Source of the DNA: Mytilus edulis
Lineage: Eukaryota
Length of the DNA stretch: 64,000 nt
Assembly (NCBI RefSeq): GCF_963676685.1
Contig: NC_092352.1
Location: 18,972,001 to 19,036,000, forward strand
Reading direction: 5' to 3'
The position numbers were made by a program, and so were the translations under genes. Shown in pieces: positions 19,156 through 48,505 of this stretch (position 1 is its first letter; every line of letters begins with the position of its first letter). The notes under the pieces are model-generated. The model was not told the DNA's origin. It did not search any database and saw only the letters and a list, made by a program, of their open reading frames with translations.

Positions 19156-19480
19156 TATCAAAGGTACCAGGATTATAATTTAGTACGCCAGACGCGCGTT
19201 TCGTCTACATAAGACTCATCAGTGACGCTTATATCAAAATATTTATAAATCCAAACAAGTACGAAATTGAAGAGCATTGAGGGTCCAAAATTCCAAAAAA
19301 TTGTGCTAAATACGGCTAAGGTAATCTTTTCCTGGGATAAGAAAATCCTTAGTTTTCGGTAAATTCAATGTTTTGTCAACAGGAAATTTATAAAAATGAC
19401 CACATAATTGATATTCATTTAAACACCGAAGTGCTGACTACTGGGCTGGTGATACCCTTTGGGACGAAACGTCCACCAGT
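19156..19480 (-). mobile_element. ~325-bp dispersed hammerhead-containing element (retrozyme or Penelope pLTR-like)
   Basis: Second copy at 55855-56181 and a degenerate partial copy at ~49378-49490. Carries a hammerhead motif on the minus strand. Confidence 0.75.
19185..19228 (-). ncRNA. Minimal type I hammerhead ribozyme
   Basis: Minus strand reads GCGUCA-CUGAUGA-GUCU(UAUGU)AGAC-GAAA-CGCGCG-UC^-UGGCGU: full conserved core, stem I (GCGUCA/UGGCGU), stem II, palindromic short stem III and a GUC cleavage triplet. Confidence 0.85.
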
Positions 19481-22038: not shown

Positions 22039-22685
22039 TCAAAATTTTATTTCCGAGGGCCAAAAAGGAATGATAACTATTGATAAAACCAGTAGTTCTA
22101 TAAATGACATAATAGCAAATTTTACAAACTAAATATTTAAACAAATAGTAACGTTGACAACAAAAATAAATATAGATTGTAAATGGAAGCTCATATTACC
22201 CAATTTACTATATTAAATGAAAACAATTACTAACATTTGTATACTGACGAATATTATCTGAATACATAAAAGGGGCATTGAATGTCAAATTCATTTTTCA
22301 CCGATTGACTCAAATTCTCATATTTGATTTATAATATACTAAAACGTATATCCAAATGACGATAAGTCTGAAATAAACAATTAACATTACATGGACTCCC
22401 TTATATATATCCGAATTTCGTGTGTATTTTAATCGAGACCATCTAATTAAGCGTTTAAACAATTTACTACAATAATTAAACAATAATTGCATAGAATTGT
22501 CAGTTAATTGTTTTGGACAACCTATTGTTAATACATAAAACTTCATATTTTGCAAACAAAATGCATCGAAAAAGACAGGTTACAATTAAAAAGGCTTTGT
22601 CGAAAATAAGTTTGGACATTGAAAATGTACTGATAAAAGATCATTTACCATGGAGTAAAACATGTATTGTATCAATTAATTACAA

Positions 22686-22918
22686 AACAAGAATGTGTCC
22701 ATAGTACACGGATGCCCAACTCGCACTATCATTTTCCATGTTCAGTGGACCGTGAAATTGGGATAAAAAGTTTAATTTGGAATTTAAATCAGAAAGATCA
22801 TATCATAGGGAACATGTGTACCAAGTTTCAAGTTGATGTGACTTCAACTTCATCAAAAACTACCTTGACCAAAAACTTTAACCTGAAGCGGGACGAACGA
22901 ACGGACGGACGAACGAGT
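22686..22918. mobile_element. Helentron-like non-autonomous element fragment with a (GGAC/GAAC)n tail
   Basis: AACAAGAATGTGTCCATAGTACACGGATGCCC start, also seen at 34378-34513. Microsatellite end. Not present in duplication copy B. Confidence 0.6.
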
Positions 22919-23263
22919 GAACCGAGAGAGTCCAATTTGTCTGACATATTCAAGCAATTGTCCTAAAGATATACACACACAAGTTAAAAGACAATAATTG
23001 ATCAGTACACAAGAATGGACATTTGTGCTAAAAACATACATTTCTCCCTACAAAAAGGCAATTTTGAGGCATACACAGGTCAAAGCGTTTTTTTTACTTT
23101 TCAATAGTTAATTTGATACATTGCTTTGATATTACAAATACAACTTGTTTATAAGATATCTGTACAATCAGCAATATAATATAAATATTTCAAACGCAAC
23201 ACGTACACAAATGGATATAGATACTTTTCAATCAAATTTGTAAGCCACGGCAGATCAGAATGT

Positions 23264-38200: not shown

Positions 38201-40834
38201 CATGCTTCAAAGACTCATAAAAAATATAACTGCTACAGAAGTCATCTCATAAAATTTCAAGTGGATATGAACATCTACTTAATATGTCTAAAGATCTAAA
38301 AGGTTATAGTATTCAATATGAAAAAGGTATTGCAAAAATATTCTCTTTTCAATTCATTTTTGTGATATGGATAAAAAATATAGGTAATACCAATACAGTA
38401 AGGCAGTTTTGTTGTGGTATGAAAGTGTATTTTAGTAATTGATAATTGCTGTTAATTCACAAAAATTAAGAAATAAACAAATGAATGATAAATGTTGAAC
38501 ATGTACAATGAAATATAGTTTTAGAATTCAATTAGGCCAAATAGGCCTTATAAATTTTTAATTTTTTTTAACATACTGGATGACCATTTACACTCAGGAC
38601 TAAGGTGTCATGTAGGCAGTATAGATGTATAAAATAAAGTGTAACATAACAATCAGGCTTCATATTGCTAGTAGCTAGAGTAGCGTTGTTTGGTAATTTT
38701 TTTTTTTTTATAAATTTGGCTAATGGACAAAAATGTTTGATTCAAATCTAAATAAAATGCTATTATCTCCCTATTACTTACATTGTACATAAAATGGATA
38801 CAACTTTGATAATTCCTTGTACATGAGAGTTGTCTGTCAAATCTTTATTTCCCAATGAATGAATTGCATAACAATGAACTGAGCTCAAAACAAAGCACTT
38901 TCATAATACACTGGACAAAGAGCTCAATCCAGTGATATACTTTGTACTACGTATATACAGGTCCTTTATATCCATCCATCGACCAAAACCATATCTCAAT
39001 TACCATGCCATACTACATATACATGATTGGATCAGAAGTCCTGAAGTGAAAGACATGAATTTTATTATTGTATTTTAAGTACAAATACCGGTTCAAACTT
39101 TCACAAATTTGTGGTAAAAGCATTCAGCATCTATCAAATATCAATCACTTCATGCACACATTGATATAGATTGAGTGCCCCTCTATTGGAAATAAGAACA
39201 TATCTCCACCTAATTTTAGTTAACTGATGAAGGAACATTCAAAACTATAAAATTTTATCTTAGACATGTGAGTTTCTATTTACCATCACCACTGAATCAA
39301 TAATATATGTAAACATACATGTATATAAGAGTAAAATTGACAAACATATATAAGACTAAAACTGACATTCGGGCTTTACTCCATCTTCATTTCTCAAGTC
39401 CATGTTCAAATCTGACTTCATGAAACCTAAATTTTAAACGATATATTCTAAATATTGTTAATACATTTCATAATAATTCTTCTCAAAACTTAATATAACA
39501 ACTATTCCTTAAAATTTAAATAAAATGGATGCAAGAAATTAAAAGTCATCCATAGGCATTCTACTTTAAATAACCAGCTGGACCATGAGTGCTTGATAAG
39601 CTTGTCACATGTACTAAGAATAAAATTACTTCTCAATGTCATATTAGAAATTGTTGAAAATCAAACAGGGATTTTACATCAATAGATATAAACAATGCAC
39701 CAAAGTTTAATGAGAATTGTTGATAACATTATCAGAAACTTGAAAATTCCCCCTTTTTAATATATTAAACCACCATAACTTGGAAATGTAAAATTTGTAA
39801 GATTCTATCTAAAGGCAGCAGCTCACATCACTAGATATCAACAATTCACCAATGTTTCAAGAGAACTGCTGAAAGCATTTTTGATTTAAAGTTTGAAAAC
39901 TGGAATATTCCCCTTTTTTTAGAACTCGGAAACATAAATTCTAAAATTAGTAAAATAAAAACGAAAGGGAGTCCACGTCGATAGATATAAACAATTCACC
40001 AAAGTTTTATGCAGTTTTATCAAAGCCTTTTAAAGTTAATGTCTGACATGTTTACAACGGACGGACAGACAGACTGACAACAGTATTCCATTATACATCC
40101 TGTAAACAGGCCTATACAAATGAGAAAACCTTATACTGTATATTCTGCTGTAGAAGAGCCCAACATGTTCATATTGGGATACTGTTAATATATCATGTAT
40201 ATTGATATAAAGATTAGAGATTTATAAAAAAGAACTTTCATGGCATCAAAACTATAAGTATTTGCATTTGTTCTGTTGATTAATAGCTATAGTGGTACAT
40301 GTACATGAGGACTGGGATGAAATCAATTATAAATGTATACATGTATAGTTCAATTCTGATCAATTGTTTCATGGTAAAAAAAGTTAAAAAAATAAAACCA
40401 GTAGTTCTATAAATGACATAATAGCAAATTTTACAAACTGAATATTTAAACAAATAGTAACGTTGACATCAAAAATACATATAGATTTTAAATGGGAGCT
40501 CATATTACCCAATTTACTTATATTCAATGAAAACAATTATTAACATTTGTATACTAACGAATATTATCTGAATACATAAAAGGGAGATTAACTGTCAAAT
40601 TCATTTTTCACCGATTTAACTCAAATTCTCATATTTGATTTATAATATACTAAAACGTATATCCAAATGACGACATACGTCTGAGTCAGTGACAACTCTA
40701 CAACAGATGTATTCATCGGATCGCCATCAATGATGGTGATACATGGCTGTGTACATAATGTATATACAACTCGTCTAAACATCAACCCAACAATGTTAGA
40801 TCTGTAAATTTGCTTTCGCAATATATATATTATG

Positions 40835-42600
40835 TATATACATTATGTACACAGCCATGTATCACCATCATTGATGGCGATCCGATGGATACATCTGTTG
40901 TAGGGTTGTCACTGACTCAGACGTACTTATGAATATAATTATTTTCTGTGACTGTATCTTACATTAATTTGTAGGATCCTTTACTATAGATAATTTAGCT
41001 GATCTGTAACAATAACATCTTCATGCCTTATATATCATGTACTGTAGTACGCCGCTAGATTAAAACTGACGTGGAAAGGTAACATATGGCCACCGAAAGC
41101 TCTTTATTGAGAGCCCAGGTGGTCGTGTGGTCTAGCGGGACGGCTGCAGTGCAGGCGATTTGGTGTCACGATATCACAGTAGCATGGGTTCGAATCCCGG
41201 CGAGGGAAGAACCAAAAATTTGCGAAAGCAAATTTACAGATCTAACATTGTTGGGTTGATGTTTAGACGAGTTGTATATACATTATGTACACAGCCATGT
41301 ATCACCATCATTGATGGCGATCCGATGGATACATCTGTTGTAGGGTTGTCACTGACTCAGACGTACTTATGAATATAATTATTTTCTGTGACTGTATCTT
41401 ACATTAATTTGTAGGATCCTTTACTATAGATAATTTAGCTGATCTGTAACAATAACATCTTCATGCCTTATATATCATGTACTGTAGTACGCCGCTAGAT
41501 TAAAACTGACGTGGAAAGGTAACATATGGCCACCGAAAGCTCTTTATTGAGAGCCCAGGTGGTCGTGTGGTCTAGCGGGACGGCTGCAGTGCAGGCGATT
41601 TGGTGTCACGATATCACAGTAGCATGGGTTCGAATCCCGGCGAGGGAAGAACCAAAAATTTGCGAAAGCAAATTTACAGATCTAACATTGTTGGGTTGAT
41701 GTTTAGACGAGTTGTATATACATTATGTACACAGCCATGTATCACCATCATTGATGGCGATCCGATGGATACATCTGTTGTAGGGTTGTCACTGACTCAG
41801 ACGTACTTATGAATATAATTATTTTCTGTGACTGTATCTTACATTAATTTGTAGGATCCTTTACTATAGATAATTTAGCTGATCTGTAACAATAACATCT
41901 TCATGCCTCATATATCATGTACTGTAGTACGCCGCTAGATTAAAACTGACGTGGAAAGGTAACATATGGCCACCGAAAGCTCTTTATTGAGAGCCCAGGT
42001 GGTCGTGTGGTCTAGCGGGACGGCTGCAGTGCAGGCGATTTGGTGTCACGATATCACAGTAGCATGGGTTCGAATCCCGGCGAGGGAAGAACCAAAAATT
42101 TGCGAAAGCAAATTTACAGATCTAACATTGTTGGGTTGATGTTTAGACGAGTTGTATATACATTATGTACACAGCCATGTATCACCATCATTGATGGCGA
42201 TCCGATGGATACATCTGTTGTAGGGTTGTCACTGACTCAGACGTACTTATGAATATAATTATTTTCTGTGACTGTATCTTACATTAATTTGTAGGATCCT
42301 TTACTATAGATAATTTAGCTGATCTGTAACAATAACATCTTCATGCCTTATATATCATGTACTGTAGTACGCCGCTAGATTAAAACTGACGTGGAAAGGT
42401 AACATATGGCCACCGAAAGCTCTTTATTGAGAGCCCAGGTGGTCGTGTGGTCTAGCGGGACGGCTGCAGTGCAGGCGATTTGGTGTCACGATATCACAGT
42501 AGCATGGGTTCGAATCCCGGCGAGGGAAGAACCAAAAATTTGCGAAAGCAAATTTACAGATCTAACATTGTTGGGTTGATGTTTAGACGAGTTGTATATA
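40835..42600 (+). repeat. 4 x 440-bp head-to-tail array with a tRNA-like Pol III head in each unit, preceded by an inverted 150-bp piece (40674-40822)
   Basis: Units start at 40835, 41275, 41715 and 42155, with one visible difference (41909). A-box TGGTCGTGTGG at 41120 and B-box GGTTCGAATCC at 41187. Flanked by (TA)n. Absent from copy A. Confidence 0.92.
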
Positions 42601-42804
42601 TATATATATATCCGAATTTCGTGTGTATTTTAGTCGAGCCATCTAATTCAGCATCGATGTGACCTCCGAAGACTGCAGACGGTCACATAACCCGATATAA
42701 ACATAAACATAACCATAAATAGATAGCGACCTCGTGCGATTTAGGTATACAAGTCTAAATTGAAAACAACGTTAAAACCTATGATTGCGTTGGATAAAAA
42801 CCGC

Positions 42805-42909
42805 AAGTTAACAGTTCCATTCTATCGATTTCATCCTACCATTGGGACTCTTCACTATAACTGTAGTCCCAATGGAAGGATGAACTTGATAGAATGGAAC
42901 TGTTAACTT
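42805..42909. mobile_element. ~105-bp hairpin/foldback MITE
   Basis: AAGTTAACAGTTCCATTCTATC...GATAGAATGGAACTGTTAACTT, almost entirely palindromic. Confidence 0.7.
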
Positions 42910-43364
42910 TTTACTTATTTTACTCTTTTATTTAATGAATATATATATATCTACACATGTGAGAATTATTTTTTACGTCTATAAATATATATATATAGCA
43001 CTGGTTTGAGTTAAGGTAGATTCATGGTATACCGCCATCTTGGATTGTAACATCGCAGTACAAAATCGGTCTAGTTATTTACCTAAATCTGCAAATTTGG
43101 AGACCTATCTTCTGATAAAAAATTCTGTCTCAATTTTTTTTTTATAATTTGCCAAAATGAAGATTTTATTATACTCTTTTCAAAAATGTAATAAAAAGCA
43201 TGGGTCACCGTGCTATTTTTCAAGCTATGAGTCATTGAAAATTGCCAAAATCTGGTAAGTTTGTTCATGAAAAAAACACATTAGTGTGCATAAAAAAAAA
43301 TCTATGAGATAGAATTTTAAAATAAATTGTCAGAAGATAGGTTTTATTATATGTTTTAAGAAAA

Positions 43365-43707
43365 TACCCAATTTCACCATTTTCCCGCCAAACTTTTAGG
43401 TTTCAGGTCAATTATTTTTTTTCTATATCGGTGACCTATGTTTTTATTTGCTCATTCTTTGAAGCAATAAGTTTCTATCAGAAGTGCGGTATTTTTTGTT
43501 ATTTTAATCTTTATAGAGAGTGAATCAAATTGATCGAAAAGAAATAGGGGGTCCCGGACCATATCAGCTCAAAATATTACTTTTAAAGATGTATGTAAAA
43601 GGGATCTTTTTTCAATGAAATGATAGGGAAAATAGAGGTGTTGATGTATTTTTATAGAAATATAAAAAAAAAAAAAACATTTGGCAGGAAAATGGTGAAA
43701 TTGGGTA
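43365..43707. mobile_element. MITE with 28-bp TIRs and TA ends
   Basis: TACCCAATTTCACCATTTTCCCGCCAAA / TTTGGCAGGAAAATGGTGAAATTGGGTA. Confidence 0.8.
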
Positions 43708-44824
43708 AACTGTCATTTTGAGTCTTTCCAGATACACATAACAATAATAATTTGTTAAGGACAAAAGTTCTATAATTTAACATTTTTAATCAATCAAAAA
43801 TTAAAAACAAATAAAAGTGAAATTACAACACAAACTTTTCGTGCGCATGCGTGAAAGTATGCGCAGTTGAATAGTCCCGAGCCATTACTGAGGGGGCCCC
43901 ATTACTAAACCAAATCTAACACAAGTTGGCCGAACATTTTACTGCAAACAACTCATATATTTAGACAATTACAGGGTACATCACGATATAGGAAATTTCT
44001 TAAGAATAAACACTGTTAAAATACACCTCAAGCAGGAGAAATAATATAAATTTACTACCTTCACACATCACGCCAGACAAACTGTGTAAATATAATGGAT
44101 AGGAGAGGATATGAAATCACTACAAGCTCATGAATAAACAAAAAGTATAAAAACAAGGCACATCTTTATTTCTTTTCTTAATCTAAAAGACACAGTGAGT
44201 TTTTGTCCTTGTATTGGTTTCATACTTCTGAGAACTTACGATTCGATATTTAGCAATGTCCGATTTAAATGACTCTTTTTGTTCCATATACATATATCAA
44301 ATCTCAAAGGGTAGGAAATGAACTATTCAAAGCGCTCTATTTATACAACAAACATTCTAAGTCACATCTTTTTATAGGTACCTGTTCACTGAAGACATCT
44401 GTGTTTTTAATCTATGGTAAAAGACACACAGGTTAAAGCTTAAAAAAACACGTTGACACTTTAAGGGAAAATGAGGAGTGAACAGAGAGAGTCCAATTTG
44501 TCTGACATATTCAAGCAATTTTCCTAAAGATATACACACAAGTTAAAGACAATAATTGATCAGTACACAAGAATGAACATTTGTGCTAAAAAATACATTT
44601 CACCCTACAAAAAAGGCAATTTTGAGGCATAAACAGGTCAAAGCGTTTTTTACTTTTAAATAGTTTATTGAATACACTGCTTTGATATTACAAATACAAC
44701 TTGTATATAAAATATATGTAAAATCAGCAATATAATATAAATATTTCAAACGCAACACGTACACAAATGAAATGGATATAGATACTTTTCAGTCAAATTT
44801 GTAAGCAACGGCAGATCAGAATGT

Positions 44825-47185: not shown

Positions 47186-48130
47186 AAAGAGGGACGAAAG
47201 ATAACAAAGGGACAGTCAAACTCATAAATCTAAAACAAACTGACAACGCCATGGCTAAAAATGAAAAAGACAAACAGAAAAACAATAGTACACATGACAC
47301 AACATAGAAAACTAAAGAATAAACAACACGAACCCCACCAAAAACTAGGGGTGATCTCAGGTGCTCCGGAAGGGTAAGCAGATCCTGCTCCACATGTGGC
47401 ACCCGTCGTGTTGCTTATGTGATTACAAATCCGGTAAATAGTCTAATTCGGTAGGTCACATTCATGAAAGGGAAGGAGATTGTAGTTACGACGTAAGGAA
47501 CATATCCGATATCATTTGTGAAACGGTTATTCCATAACGGTCAACTAACTCGTGATGGCGTCCGTAAAATTTACGAAGGGATGATTTCAACTTCACCATT
47601 TGGAACTCTTGGTTTAATAGCTTCCTTGTGAGCAGTAACCCTCTATCAAGAAAATCATGATAGGAAATGCAAGCACGGGAATATCGTATCAATTGGGAGA
47701 TATATACCCCGTATGCAGGTGCTGCTGGAATGTTGCTACTTAGAAATGGAAAGTTCACAATTGGAAAGCTGAAATCATCTCTTTTTTCGTAAAGTTTTGT
47801 TTTCAACCGACCCTCATTGTCAATTTCTAGATGTAAGTCAAGATATGAAGCCGACTTAACTGTATCTGTAGTATCCTTTATCTCCAATTCGATGGGATAG
47901 ATGCGTTCCACATAGTCACCAAATTTTGAATTGTTTTGTGAAAGAACGTCATCTATATAGCGGAAAGAAGAGTTAAAGGATATTGCTAACTTCTTATCTT
48001 TCTTCCTAAGAAGTTCCTGCATGAAGTCAGCCTCATAATAATAAAGAAACAAGTTGGCAAGTAGAGGGGCACAGTTTGTTCCCATTGGGATGCCGACAGT
48101 CTGTTGAAAAACACGTCCTCCGAACGTTAC
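47186..48130 (-). mobile_element. 5'-truncated Penelope-like retroelement (RT C-terminal half plus 3' UTR)
   Basis: ORF with QQTVGIPMGTNCAPLLANLFL, FRYIDDVL, SYLDL and KRDDFSFPIVNFPFLSSNIP...GVYISQLIRYSRAC (PLE-type RT and thumb). Stop at 47486. Absent from copy A. The same 3' end recurs at 50071-50220. Confidence 0.85.
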
Positions 48131-48505
48131 AACATGAATAACACCGAAAAGTATTCCCCCTTGAAACAATTTCTATAAATACACTTCATGTTGAACCCCT
48201 CTGTTGACACAAACATATACATAAACGAAAGTTTTGTCCATTGTAATTGTTAATAACTTTTGACAAGATTTATAGTTTTGCACAAGTTGTTTTTGGATGA
48301 TAACTCTTGCACCCCATTATGAATTATATCATATTTACATAGATAGGATACACAATACTGGTAATAGTAAAGTTTTTACCTATTTTTGTCTCTTGTAGCG
48401 TACTATTTCGAACCATTGAAATAAAGTGGTGTCACGCCCATGCGCTCACTTTTGTTTCCCACTAACAAGTAGTGCCCTTCGATCCTCTTACTAAACAATG
48501 ATTAC

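What the first reader, a model, noticed from the sequence alone, without database searches (positions are those of the whole stretch)
40674..42610. 440-nt tandem monomer that looks like a structured RNA (retrozyme/circRNA-like) with Pol III boxes and a variant hammerhead-like junction
Seen: four almost identical 440-bp head-to-tail units. The + strand of each unit pairs extensively: two 11-bp helices (41038-41048/41143-41153 and 41052-41062/41128-41138) with five G-U pairs and no A-C mismatches, which points to RNA-level and strand-specific constraint; an 8-bp stem capped by a GAAA tetraloop (41216-41235); AUCUUACA/UGUAGGAU (40956-40977); CCAUCA/UGAUGG; and a 9-bp long-range pair (41001-41009/41234-41242). 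The long helix encloses CUGACGU-GG..CC-GAAA-GCUCU/AGAGC-CC (41066-41116), which has hammerhead topology but two core deviations (A9>U, U16.1>C) and a weak proximal stem I. Pol III A/B boxes overlap the 3' arm. The paralog shows the target was a short (TA)n tract (22402-22410), and the 5' end carries an inverted piece spanning the monomer junction. Known: non-LTR retrozymes are ribozyme-bearing tandem monomers that yield circRNAs, and Penelope-type insertions often show tandem plus inverted 5' structure. Inference: a (TA)n-targeting, RNA-templated mobile element copied from a circular or multimeric RNA, possibly with a non-canonical self-cleaving motif. Caveat: a T4 run in each unit could terminate Pol III.
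Basis: partly seen in the sequence, partly recalled or inferred. Interest (0 to 1): 0.85.

Follow-up and report, generated by a model that had tools for sequence, protein, structure and literature searches.

The report
Tandem structured retroelement targeting TA repeats
This is a young 440-base mussel jumping element that is copied through RNA into TA-repeats as head-to-tail arrays; it carries a tRNA-like promoter piece and a conserved RNA fold, but its hammerhead look-alike shows no sign of being a working ribozyme.

Summary
Window 40833-42592 holds four 440-bp units (99.8-100% identical). An inverted junction-spanning piece (40676-40821) precedes them and (TA)n follows.

This scan met the same family twice before on other DNA (s1-832274, s1-834038); my independent tests agree with those follow-ups.

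- **Insertion pattern:** the family sits at well over 100 loci on all 14 large contigs. Of 68 arrays, 55 end at unit positions 437-440 and 54 have (TA)n just beyond the 3' end. The 5' ends are variable and head-to-head inverted arms recur. This fits target-primed reverse transcription of the Penelope-like kind.
- **RNA:** the + strand is abundant, reads head-to-tail and has no preferred ends.
- **Structure:** a roughly 125-nt rod pairs upstream sequence with the 5' half of the tRNA-like module. It is kept, with compensatory changes, in two sister families.
- **Hammerhead:** not supported. Older copies have CUGA(C/U)GA, but the young active subfamily has CUGACGU. U16.1 and a proximal stem I are missing, sister families lack the core, and reads show no cleavage-site pile-up.
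- **Open questions:** whether the RNA is circular, which polymerase makes it, and which reverse transcriptase copies it.

It is a new variant of a known kind.

The parts
40676..40821 (-). Inverted, 5'-truncated partial copy. It is the reverse complement of unit positions 388-440 followed by 1-93, so it spans a unit junction. It carries the subfamily variant 72A, which the direct array lacks.
   Evidence: BLAST of the unit against the window; sequence read; variant table.
40822..40832 (.). TA-rich spacer between the inverted piece and the direct array.
   Evidence: Sequence read.
40833..42592 (+). Four head-to-tail 440-bp units: 40833-41272, 41273-41712, 41713-42152 and 42153-42592. GC content is 41%, and the longest stop-free frame is 78 codons.
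   Evidence: TRF; BLAST; composition and ORF check.
42593..42610 (.). 3' junction. The first 8 bases of a further unit (TGTATATA) run into (TA)n, the target microsatellite.
   Evidence: The same junction is found at 55 of 68 arrays elsewhere in the genome.
41038..41153 (+). Conserved rod-like RNA domain (coordinates of unit 1). Helix 1 is 41038-48/41143-53 and helix 2 is 41052-62/41128-38. The inner helix is 41084-94/41118-28. The hairpin is 41099-41104/41109-41114 with a U-rich loop.
   Evidence: MFE fold. Covariance model R1 finds sister families. 16 of 36 pairs change on both sides.
41066..41116 (+). Hammerhead look-alike: CUGACGU, a weak stem II, GAAA, a 5-bp stem III, then C16.1 and C17. 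It is judged a degenerate core with no evidence of activity.
   Evidence: Alignment of young and old copies; Rfam scans; folding the segment alone gives no hammerhead fold; no read ends at the site.
41113..41214 (+). tRNA-derived module. The A-box region is 41120-41138 and the perfect B box is 41187-41197. It does not fold as a cloverleaf on its own (z -0.4).
   Evidence: Sequence; ARAGORN and the Rfam tRNA model find nothing; fold.
41216..41235 (+). 8-bp stem capped by a GAAA tetraloop. It is near-palindromic, is a hot spot of 5' ends, and is the usual site of head-to-head inversion junctions.
   Evidence: Older subfamily: 17 of 44 5' ends fall at unit positions 389-400.
41236..41280 (+). 3' tail motif ending in TTTAGACGAGTTG-TATATA. 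This is the usual 3' end and priming site on (TA)n targets.
   Evidence: 3' junction table. The YAGAC-N-(TA)n tail is shared with other repeat families.
40913..40945 (+). A second, tail-like motif (CTCAGACGTACTTATGAATATA), used as an alternative 3' end in about 10% of arrays. It is followed by the T4 run at 40942-40945.
   Evidence: Arrays ending near unit position 105.
22083..22452 (+). Paralogous empty site. The flanks match up to 40673 and from 42603. It has (TA)4 plus about 39 bp that are absent from the filled site.
   Evidence: BLAST of the flanks.

Best explanation
The array is one insertion of a young, non-autonomous retroelement family of a Mytilus-type genome.

Shown:
- Copies lie at well over 100 loci.
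- Most arrays share a constant 3' end that melts into (TA)n.
- The 5' ends are variable, and arrays hold 0.1 to 16 units.
- Head-to-head inverted arms are frequent.
- The + strand is abundantly transcribed as head-to-tail RNA.
- A rod-like domain that pairs upstream sequence with the 5' half of a tRNA-derived module is conserved in sister families.

Inferred:
- An endonuclease-bearing reverse transcriptase of the Penelope-like kind (Naiad or Neptune type) nicks (TA)n.
- The TA-ended DNA primes on the UAUAUA that follows the ...AGACGAGUUG tail, or less often on a second tail-like site near unit position 105.
- The enzyme then copies a multimeric RNA, a circular RNA, or successive RNAs joined by template jumps at their UA-rich ends. 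It stops at variable points.
- The other DNA end can prime as well, which gives the inverted arm.

The hammerhead-like core is a decayed relic or a chance resemblance, not the processing device. The tRNA-like piece probably supplies promoter boxes, but most of the RNA seen is not a Pol III start-to-terminator unit.
For: Dispersal:
- At least 181 unit matches at 98-100% identity.
- 150 top covariance-model hits on all 14 large contigs.
- An older subfamily with 2714 first-look candidates.

Junctions:
- 55 of 68 arrays end at unit positions 437-440.
- 54 of 68 have (TA)4 or more within 20 nt of the 3' end, against 0.6% of window bins.
- 43 of 68 have TA repeats at the 5' flank.
- 5' ends range from position 15 to 415, with clusters at 270-310 (P 0.009) and 380-416 (P 4e-4).

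Inverted arms:
- Seen in the window and in L035, L036, L043, L045, L062 and L063.
- Both arms of L063 share two private variants.

RNA:
- Depth is 840-1950 on one strand against 12-96 on the other.
- 1394 reads cross head-to-tail.
- No place has piled-up ends.
- Only 7% of reads run on into unlike sequence.

Structure.

Literature (PMC8557442):
- Naiads prefer (TA)n, lack canonical hammerheads, and show 5' truncation, partial tandems and inverted 5' copies.
- Non-autonomous Chlamys elements make multicopy head-to-tail insertions.
Against: - No autonomous partner with the same tail was found. The Naiad 3' fragment in the window (47498-48130, minus strand) has a different tail without (TA)n. The C-terminal-endonuclease Penelope-like copies in L073, L074 and L077 end in (TA)n but lack the AGAC tail.
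- A (TA)n-specific LINE cannot be excluded.
- Short reads cannot separate circular from multimeric RNA, because the DNA itself is tandem.
- The type of the RNA library is unknown, so Pol III products may be under-represented.
- The covariation alignment was fitted to the model. Sister-family 5' arms could in principle have been renewed by repeated inverted duplication rather than kept by selection.
Confidence: 0.72

Rival explanations
1. It is a true retrozyme. A non-canonical self-cleaving motif (the hammerhead look-alike or another motif in the rod) cuts multimeric transcripts into 440-nt monomers. A host ligase circularises these, and a Penelope-like reverse transcriptase copies the circle by rolling around it.
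For: - Tandem units of retrozyme size and GC content.
- Abundant + strand head-to-tail RNA without ends and with few flank reads.
- Older copies carry CUGA(C/U)GA ... GAAA, and the L035 lineage also has U16.1 followed by C.
- A cluster of 5' ends at unit positions 276-284 coincides with the predicted cut after position 284.
- Mussel retrozyme circRNAs are known (PMC7229834).
Against: - The most active subfamily has lost A9.
- Position 16.1 is C in almost all copies.
- There is no helix I next to the core.
- In the predicted fold, the would-be 3' strands of stems II and I pair with each other, and that inner helix shows a compensatory change in L035.
- The sister families keep the fold but not the core.
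- Rfam reports no hammerhead, twister or other ribozyme at E up to 10.
- The 5' cluster at positions 276-284 is explained just as well by a Pol III start site.
Confidence: 0.13
2. It is an ordinary tRNA-derived SINE mobilised by a (TA)n-specific LINE. The tandem arrays arise from read-through Pol III transcripts or from later DNA-level amplification.
For: - A and B boxes are present.
- Several insertions are exactly head plus tail, covering unit positions 276-284 to 440, about 160 nt.
- A non-tandem 289-nt sister SINE exists.
- L040 shows a 3-unit higher-order pattern typical of unequal exchange.
Against: - The head is not at the 5' end of the unit.
- The expressed RNA contains T4 and T6-7 runs internally, and reads cross them.
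- Multi-unit arrays with shared private variants, and multi-unit inverted arms, are the signature of Penelope-like elements rather than LINEs (PMC8557442).
- No LINE with this tail was seen.
Confidence: 0.1
3. It is a plain satellite or a repeat carried by a DNA transposon or Helitron, with no RNA intermediate.
For: Tandem arrays of up to 16 units, and a higher-order pattern in one array.
Against: - Truncation is polar: the 3' end is fixed and the 5' end is free.
- Both flanks are (TA)n.
- There are hundreds of short dispersed arrays at 98-100% identity.
- No terminal inverted repeats or Helitron ends are present.
Confidence: 0.03

Closest known systems
Metazoan non-LTR retrozymes (Cervera and de la Pena 2020, PMC7229834), including the 350-390-bp Mytilus galloprovincialis retrozymes
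   Same: Short AT-rich tandem units, strongly expressed as one strand. The predicted RNA is highly self-paired. The host group is the same, and mobilisation by Penelope-like enzymes is presumed.
   Different: The unit is 440 bp. It has no canonical type I hammerhead: the core is degenerate and stem I is absent. It carries a tRNA-derived module. Circular RNA has not been shown here.
Naiad and Neptune Penelope-like elements, and non-autonomous Chlamys elements such as MRC1 (Craig et al. 2021, PMC8557442)
   Same: (TA)n insertion bias, 5' truncation, head-to-tail multicopy insertions, inverted 5' copies, no canonical hammerhead but an 'HHR_core'-like string.
   Different: No reverse transcriptase gene. 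No tail shared with an autonomous element was demonstrated. A tRNA-like promoter piece is not described for such elements in that paper.
tRNA-derived SINEs with conserved central domains (for example the mollusc SINEs of PMC4758252)
   Same: Promoter boxes of tRNA origin, a conserved internal domain shared by several families, and a tail with a terminal simple repeat.
   Different: The tRNA part lies in the last third of the unit and is base-paired to upstream sequence. Copies form phased tandem arrays and inverted arms. The unit is not bounded by a Pol III start and terminator.
Twin priming of L1 insertions (from my own knowledge)
   Same: An inverted 5' segment joined head-to-head to the direct copy. 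Target deletion at a microhomology, as at 40674-40676.
   Different: Here both arms can be several units long, and the junctions favour a palindromic GAAA hairpin.

Membership tests
Hammerhead ribozyme, type I | Conserved box CUGANGA (C3 to A9) | tested here: not met
   The window copy and all young copies have CUGACGU. Older copies (L076, L049a, L035, L065b, L053, L048a, L039) have CUGACGA or CUGAUGA. No CUGANGA occurs on either strand of the window unit.
Hammerhead ribozyme, type I | GAAA followed by helix III closed by A15.1-U16.1, then H17 | tested here: not met
   GAAA and a 5-bp helix III are present, and the helix covaries C-G to U-A. Position 16.1 is C in all copies except the two L035 units.
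Hammerhead ribozyme, type I | Helix I adjoining the core, and a stable helix II | tested here: not met
   There are no pairs next to the core: 3 nt lie opposite about 11 nt before the distal helix. Stem II is only 2+2 bp. The segment folded alone does not give a hammerhead.
Hammerhead ribozyme, type I | Match to the curated covariance models | tested here: not met
   No hammerhead hit at E up to 10 in 40000-43200 or in the L035 copies. The same scan finds Hammerhead_1 at window 19185-19228. It misses the minimal hammerhead of the Penelope-like element in L073, so this negative result is weak.
Hammerhead ribozyme, type I | Self-cleavage | not testable with these tools
   The only indirect evidence is that no read ends pile up at 41116/41117.
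Non-LTR retrozyme | Tandem units of 150-450 bp with low GC | tested here: met
   440 bp, GC 41%.
Non-LTR retrozyme | A self-cleaving ribozyme in every unit | tested here: not met
   See the hammerhead rows. No other Rfam ribozyme was found.
Non-LTR retrozyme | Expressed as monomeric circular RNA | tested here: inconclusive
   + strand reads cross head-to-tail, show no ends and seldom reach flanks. Tandem DNA gives the same joints.
Non-autonomous element dependent on a Penelope-like element | Microsatellite target, for Naiads (TA)n | tested here: met
   54 of 68 3' flanks and 43 of 68 5' flanks are TA repeats.
Non-autonomous element dependent on a Penelope-like element | 5' truncation, head-to-tail copies, adjacent inverted 5'-truncated copy | tested here: met
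   The window itself shows both features.
Non-autonomous element dependent on a Penelope-like element | 3' end shared with an autonomous element | tested here: inconclusive
   No shared tail was found in the roughly 250 kb held. Further fetching was not possible.
tRNA-derived SINE | tRNA-related head with A and B boxes | tested here: inconclusive
   The B box is perfect and the A-box region is close. ARAGORN and the Rfam tRNA model find nothing, and there is no cloverleaf.
tRNA-derived SINE | Unit equals a Pol III transcript, with the head at the 5' end and a terminator at the 3' end | tested here: not met
   The head lies at unit positions 281-382 of 440. 3' ends fall at positions 440 or 105, not at T runs. 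Reads cross the T4 and T6-7 runs.

The most novel reading that the evidence does not exclude
This is a ribozyme-free counterpart of a retrozyme. A 440-nt circular or endlessly concatenated + strand RNA would be made without any self-cleaving motif, for example through host processing or ligation acting on the conserved rod and tRNA-like domain. A (TA)n-specific Penelope-like reverse transcriptase would then copy it by rolling around it. The conserved rod would be the handle that the enzyme recognises.
Probability: 0.15. Interest if true: 0.8.

Novelty: new variant of a known kind. Interest (0 to 1): 0.5.

Why it matters
Penelope-like elements dominate bivalve genomes, yet how they build tandem and inverted insertions, and what RNA they copy, is unsettled. 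This family is a compact, currently active test case:
- It has a fixed priming site on (TA)n.
- It is transcribed as one strand.
- It shares a conserved RNA domain with sister families.
- Its hammerhead core has decayed while the family kept spreading.

That last point bears on whether ribozymes are needed at all for this kind of retrotransposition. It also shows that a tRNA-derived promoter piece can be part of a Penelope-style element, which blurs the line between SINEs and retrozymes.

Tried and rejected
- **Rfam scans:** E-value scans of the region, the whole window, the L035 copies and three further loci gave only palindrome-driven microRNA look-alikes and no ribozyme or tRNA.
- **Twister lead:** earlier notes report a twister-like motif in Naiad tails. 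A Twister-P5 search of the genome found nothing, and its control rang nowhere, so it is uninformative. There is no twister hit in the unit.
- **Partner hunt:** I searched GIY-YIG loci, compared tails and ran Naiad proteins against all held DNA. No element with the same tail was found.
- **'Family B' tail:** it looked like the end of a Penelope-like element but proved to be a separate foldback repeat.
- **Covariation within the family:** this was too weak to decide anything (3 pairs). It became informative only after sister families were added.
- **Coding:** there is no coding potential; the longest stop-free frame is 78 codons.
- **Literature:** the exact sequence strings were not found in the paper library, and no retrozyme sequences were available in the supplement for comparison.
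- **Helitron or DNA-transposon carriage:** rejected on the junction data.
Full report
**What is in the window**

TRF reports one array at 40833-42600 with period 440, 4.0 copies and 99% matches. BLAST of the first unit finds 40833-41272, 41273-41712 and 42153-42592 at 100% and 41713-42152 at 99.8%. It also finds an inverted piece at 40676-40821, which is the reverse complement of unit positions 388-440 followed by 1-93. The array ends in TGTATATA plus (TA)n at 42593-42610.

The flanks have a paralogue at 22083-22362 and 22402-22452, about 94.5% identical. It carries (TA)4 and about 39 bp that the filled site lacks. The insertion therefore came with a small target deletion. The left junction sits at a short similarity: TCAGAC..TA in the target against CTCAGACGTA in the element.

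**Genome and distribution**

The assembly has 1.37 Gb and 14 large contigs. A protein from a nearby repeat is 99% identical to a Mytilus trossulus entry, so this is a Mytilus-type mussel; that identification is my inference.

- The unit matches at least 181 places at 98-100% identity.
- A covariance model of its central domain gives 150 near-maximal hits on all 14 large contigs.
- An older subfamily, about 92% identical to ours and 90-96% among its own copies, has 2714 first-look candidates.

**Junction statistics**

I fetched 38 loci and tabulated 68 arrays.

- 3' ends: 55 arrays end at unit positions 437-440, and a further 8 end between positions 93 and 112 at a second, similar motif.
- 3' flanks: 54 arrays have (TA)4 or more within 20 nt of the 3' end, against 0.6% of 20-nt bins in the window.
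- 5' flanks: 43 have TA repeats at the 5' flank.
- 5' ends: these range from position 15 to 415.
- Array length: 0.1 to 16 units, with a median of 1.5.
- 5'-end clusters: positions 270-310 (13 of 68, P 0.009) and 380-416 (15 of 68, P 4e-4). In the older subfamily, 17 of 44 ends fall at positions 389-400, inside the GAAA-capped hairpin (P 1e-15).
- Inverted arms: head-to-head arms occur at several loci besides the window, often joined at that near-palindromic hairpin.
- Shared variants: in L063 a 10-unit arm and a 3.8-unit arm share two private variants, so they come from one source. In the window, the inverted piece carries variant 72A that the direct array lacks, so two templates or two events were involved.

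A fixed 3' end, free 5' ends, microsatellite targets and tandem plus inverted copies are what Craig et al. describe for Naiad and other endonuclease-bearing Penelope-like elements. Their non-autonomous relatives also make multicopy head-to-tail insertions (PMC8557442).

**RNA**

One raw stranded RNA run (X24) was laid on a permuted single unit, window 41032-41471.

- Depth is 840-1950 with first mates on the minus strand and 12-96 on the plus strand. By the usual library convention, the RNA is therefore the + strand, the sense of the tRNA-like piece.
- 1394 reads cross the permutation point head-to-tail.
- No position has piled-up read starts or ends.
- Only 7% of laid reads run on into unlike sequence.
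- 35 reads leave the unit at 41280 into (TA)n.

If transcription were passive read-through of genomic arrays averaging 2.4 units, I estimate that about 17% of reads would reach flanks. The RNA is therefore enriched in unit-to-unit sequence. That fits long multimers or circles, but it cannot tell them apart.

Most expressed copies have a T6-7 run in the hairpin loop at 41103-41108, and reads cross it. Most of this RNA is therefore not a Pol III start-to-terminator product. The library type is not on record, so Pol III transcripts may be under-sampled.

**Structure**

| Sequence | + strand MFE (kcal/mol) | + strand z | - strand MFE (kcal/mol) | - strand z |
|---|---|---|---|---|
| Window unit | -143.1 | -4.9 | -109.4 | -2.1 |
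| Older copy (L076) | -130.5 | -3.5 | -103.6 | -1.7 |
| 289-nt non-tandem sister element (L059:890-1178) | -80.5 | -4.2 | -61.5 | -2.4 |

The core of all three folds is the same. Two long helices and an inner helix pair upstream sequence with the 5' half of the tRNA-like module, and they enclose a hairpin with a U-rich loop.

Within the family, covariation is too sparse to decide anything. A covariance model of unit positions 198-330 finds the sister element at 40-49 bits and a third family (L045:2347-2479) at 21 bits. On that alignment:

- 16 of 36 pairs change on both sides, against 7.0 +/- 1.8 in shuffles (0 of 500).
- 94.9% of cells pair, against 86% in shuffles.
- Slid controls give 2-6 pairs.

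There are caveats. The alignment is fitted to the model, two of its rows are a palindromic insertion junction, and three are copies of one sister family. By eye the compensation is clear all the same. Helix 1 is UGUACUGUAGU/GCUGCAGUGCA here and UUUCAUGUC/GACAUGAGG in the sister. Helix 2 differs by G-C to U-A.

The 5' arm is the reverse complement of the 3' arm with only C-to-U differences, which gives G-U pairs and never A-C, in both families. Its likely origin is an inverted duplication of the tRNA-like half, kept as an RNA helix afterwards.

**The hammerhead question**

- The window unit has CUGACGU. Ten older or divergent copies have CUGACGA or CUGAUGA, so A9>U is derived in the youngest subfamily.
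- Position 16.1 is U only in the two L035 units.
- No helix I adjoins the core, and stem II is 2+2 bp.
- In the predicted fold, the 3' strands of the would-be stems II and I pair with each other. That helix has a compensatory C-G to G-C change in L035.
- The two sister families keep the fold, the string AAGGUAACAC and a GAA(A) before the hairpin, but not CUGANGA.
- Rfam gives no ribozyme at E up to 10. It does find a Hammerhead_1 at 19185-19228, but it misses the minimal hammerhead of a Penelope-like element in L073, so this negative result is weak.

Craig et al. note 'HHR_core' strings in Naiads that fit no hammerhead descriptor, and this looks like the same thing. I conclude that it is a relic or a coincidence, not a working ribozyme.

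**The tRNA-like piece**

It has a perfect B box and a near-consensus A-box region. ARAGORN and the Rfam tRNA model do not detect it. Alone it folds no better than shuffled sequence.

The 5' ends at unit positions 276-284, and insertions that are exactly head plus tail (about 160 nt), fit some transcripts that start at a Pol III site just upstream of the A box. The same position is also the predicted hammerhead cut, so these ends do not discriminate between the two.

**How arrays form**

- Some arrays are uniform, with private variants shared by every unit (L059, L063, L042, L054).
- One array has a three-unit higher-order pattern (L040).
- Some arrays mix subfamily types (L051, L062, L065).

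The first pattern fits one-step copying of a homogeneous multimer or circle. The others show later DNA-level exchange or template switching between RNAs. Because the unit begins and ends in UAUAUA-like sequence, serial template jumps would also give in-phase arrays.

**Partner**

The partner was not identified. The Naiad 3' fragment in the window (47498-48130, minus strand) has another tail. The C-terminal-endonuclease elements in L073, L074, L077 and L080 end in (TA)n about 200 bp after the endonuclease and carry a minimal hammerhead, but they have no AGAC tail. Several unrelated short families share YAGAC-N-(TA)n ends.

**Earlier notes and verdict**

Earlier notes of this scan describe the same family on other DNA (s1-832274, s1-834038) and reach the same reading. 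I tested their claims independently here.

This is a real, active and structured Penelope-style tandem retroelement with a tRNA-derived module. It is a new variant of a known kind.

Noticed in passing
window 19185-19228 (-): Hammerhead_1 match of 33 bits, just under the gathering score of 34 (E 2.4e-4). It served as a positive control for the ribozyme scan.
   Followed up: partly
window 47486-48169 (-): 227-codon open frame, 58-62% identical to the C-terminal 210 residues of Naiad-type Penelope-like proteins. Its 3' UTR is rich in short palindromes (CCACATGTGG, AGCAGGATCTGCT) and does not end in (TA)n.
   Followed up: partly
window 42805-42909: About 105-bp near-perfect hairpin (84% arm identity) just right of the array. 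It gives microRNA-model look-alike hits and is probably a small foldback repeat.
   Followed up: no
window 42745-42810 (-); also L039, L040, L054, L068: Another short repeat family ending in ...GTTTTCAATTTAGACTCGTT(TA)n. Several unrelated families share a YAGAC-N-(TA)n 3' end.
   Followed up: partly
L045:2560-2640 (-); also L035:170-290 (+) and L050 (-) near 2589: A repeat with a canonical-looking hammerhead core (CUGAUGA, a GCUAA/UUAGC stem, GAAA) about 65 nt before a TAGACATT(TA)n end. Rfam did not report it at E 0.1.
   Followed up: partly
L073:1700-1985, L074, L077 (-): Penelope-like elements with a C-terminal endonuclease. They carry a minimal type I hammerhead (GUCGC-CUGAAGA-...-GAAA-GCGC-UA/GUGAC) about 110 nt before a (TA)n end.
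   Followed up: partly
L043:1201-2208 and flanks: A head-to-head pair of arrays whose outer flanks are also inverted copies of each other. This is either a larger palindrome or an assembly artefact.
   Followed up: no
L040:1201-8240: A 16-unit array with a three-unit higher-order pattern of single-base variants (390T, 231T, 262T) repeated about 3.5 times.
   Followed up: partly
window 41122-41271, antisense reads: Minus-strand RNA signal rises from about 1.5% to about 7% of the depth over the tRNA-like piece and tail. This may be read-through into inverted arms.
   Followed up: no
window 22083-23043 and 40392-44600: Segmental duplication, about 94.5% identical. It predates the insertion and supplies the empty site.
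   Followed up: partly
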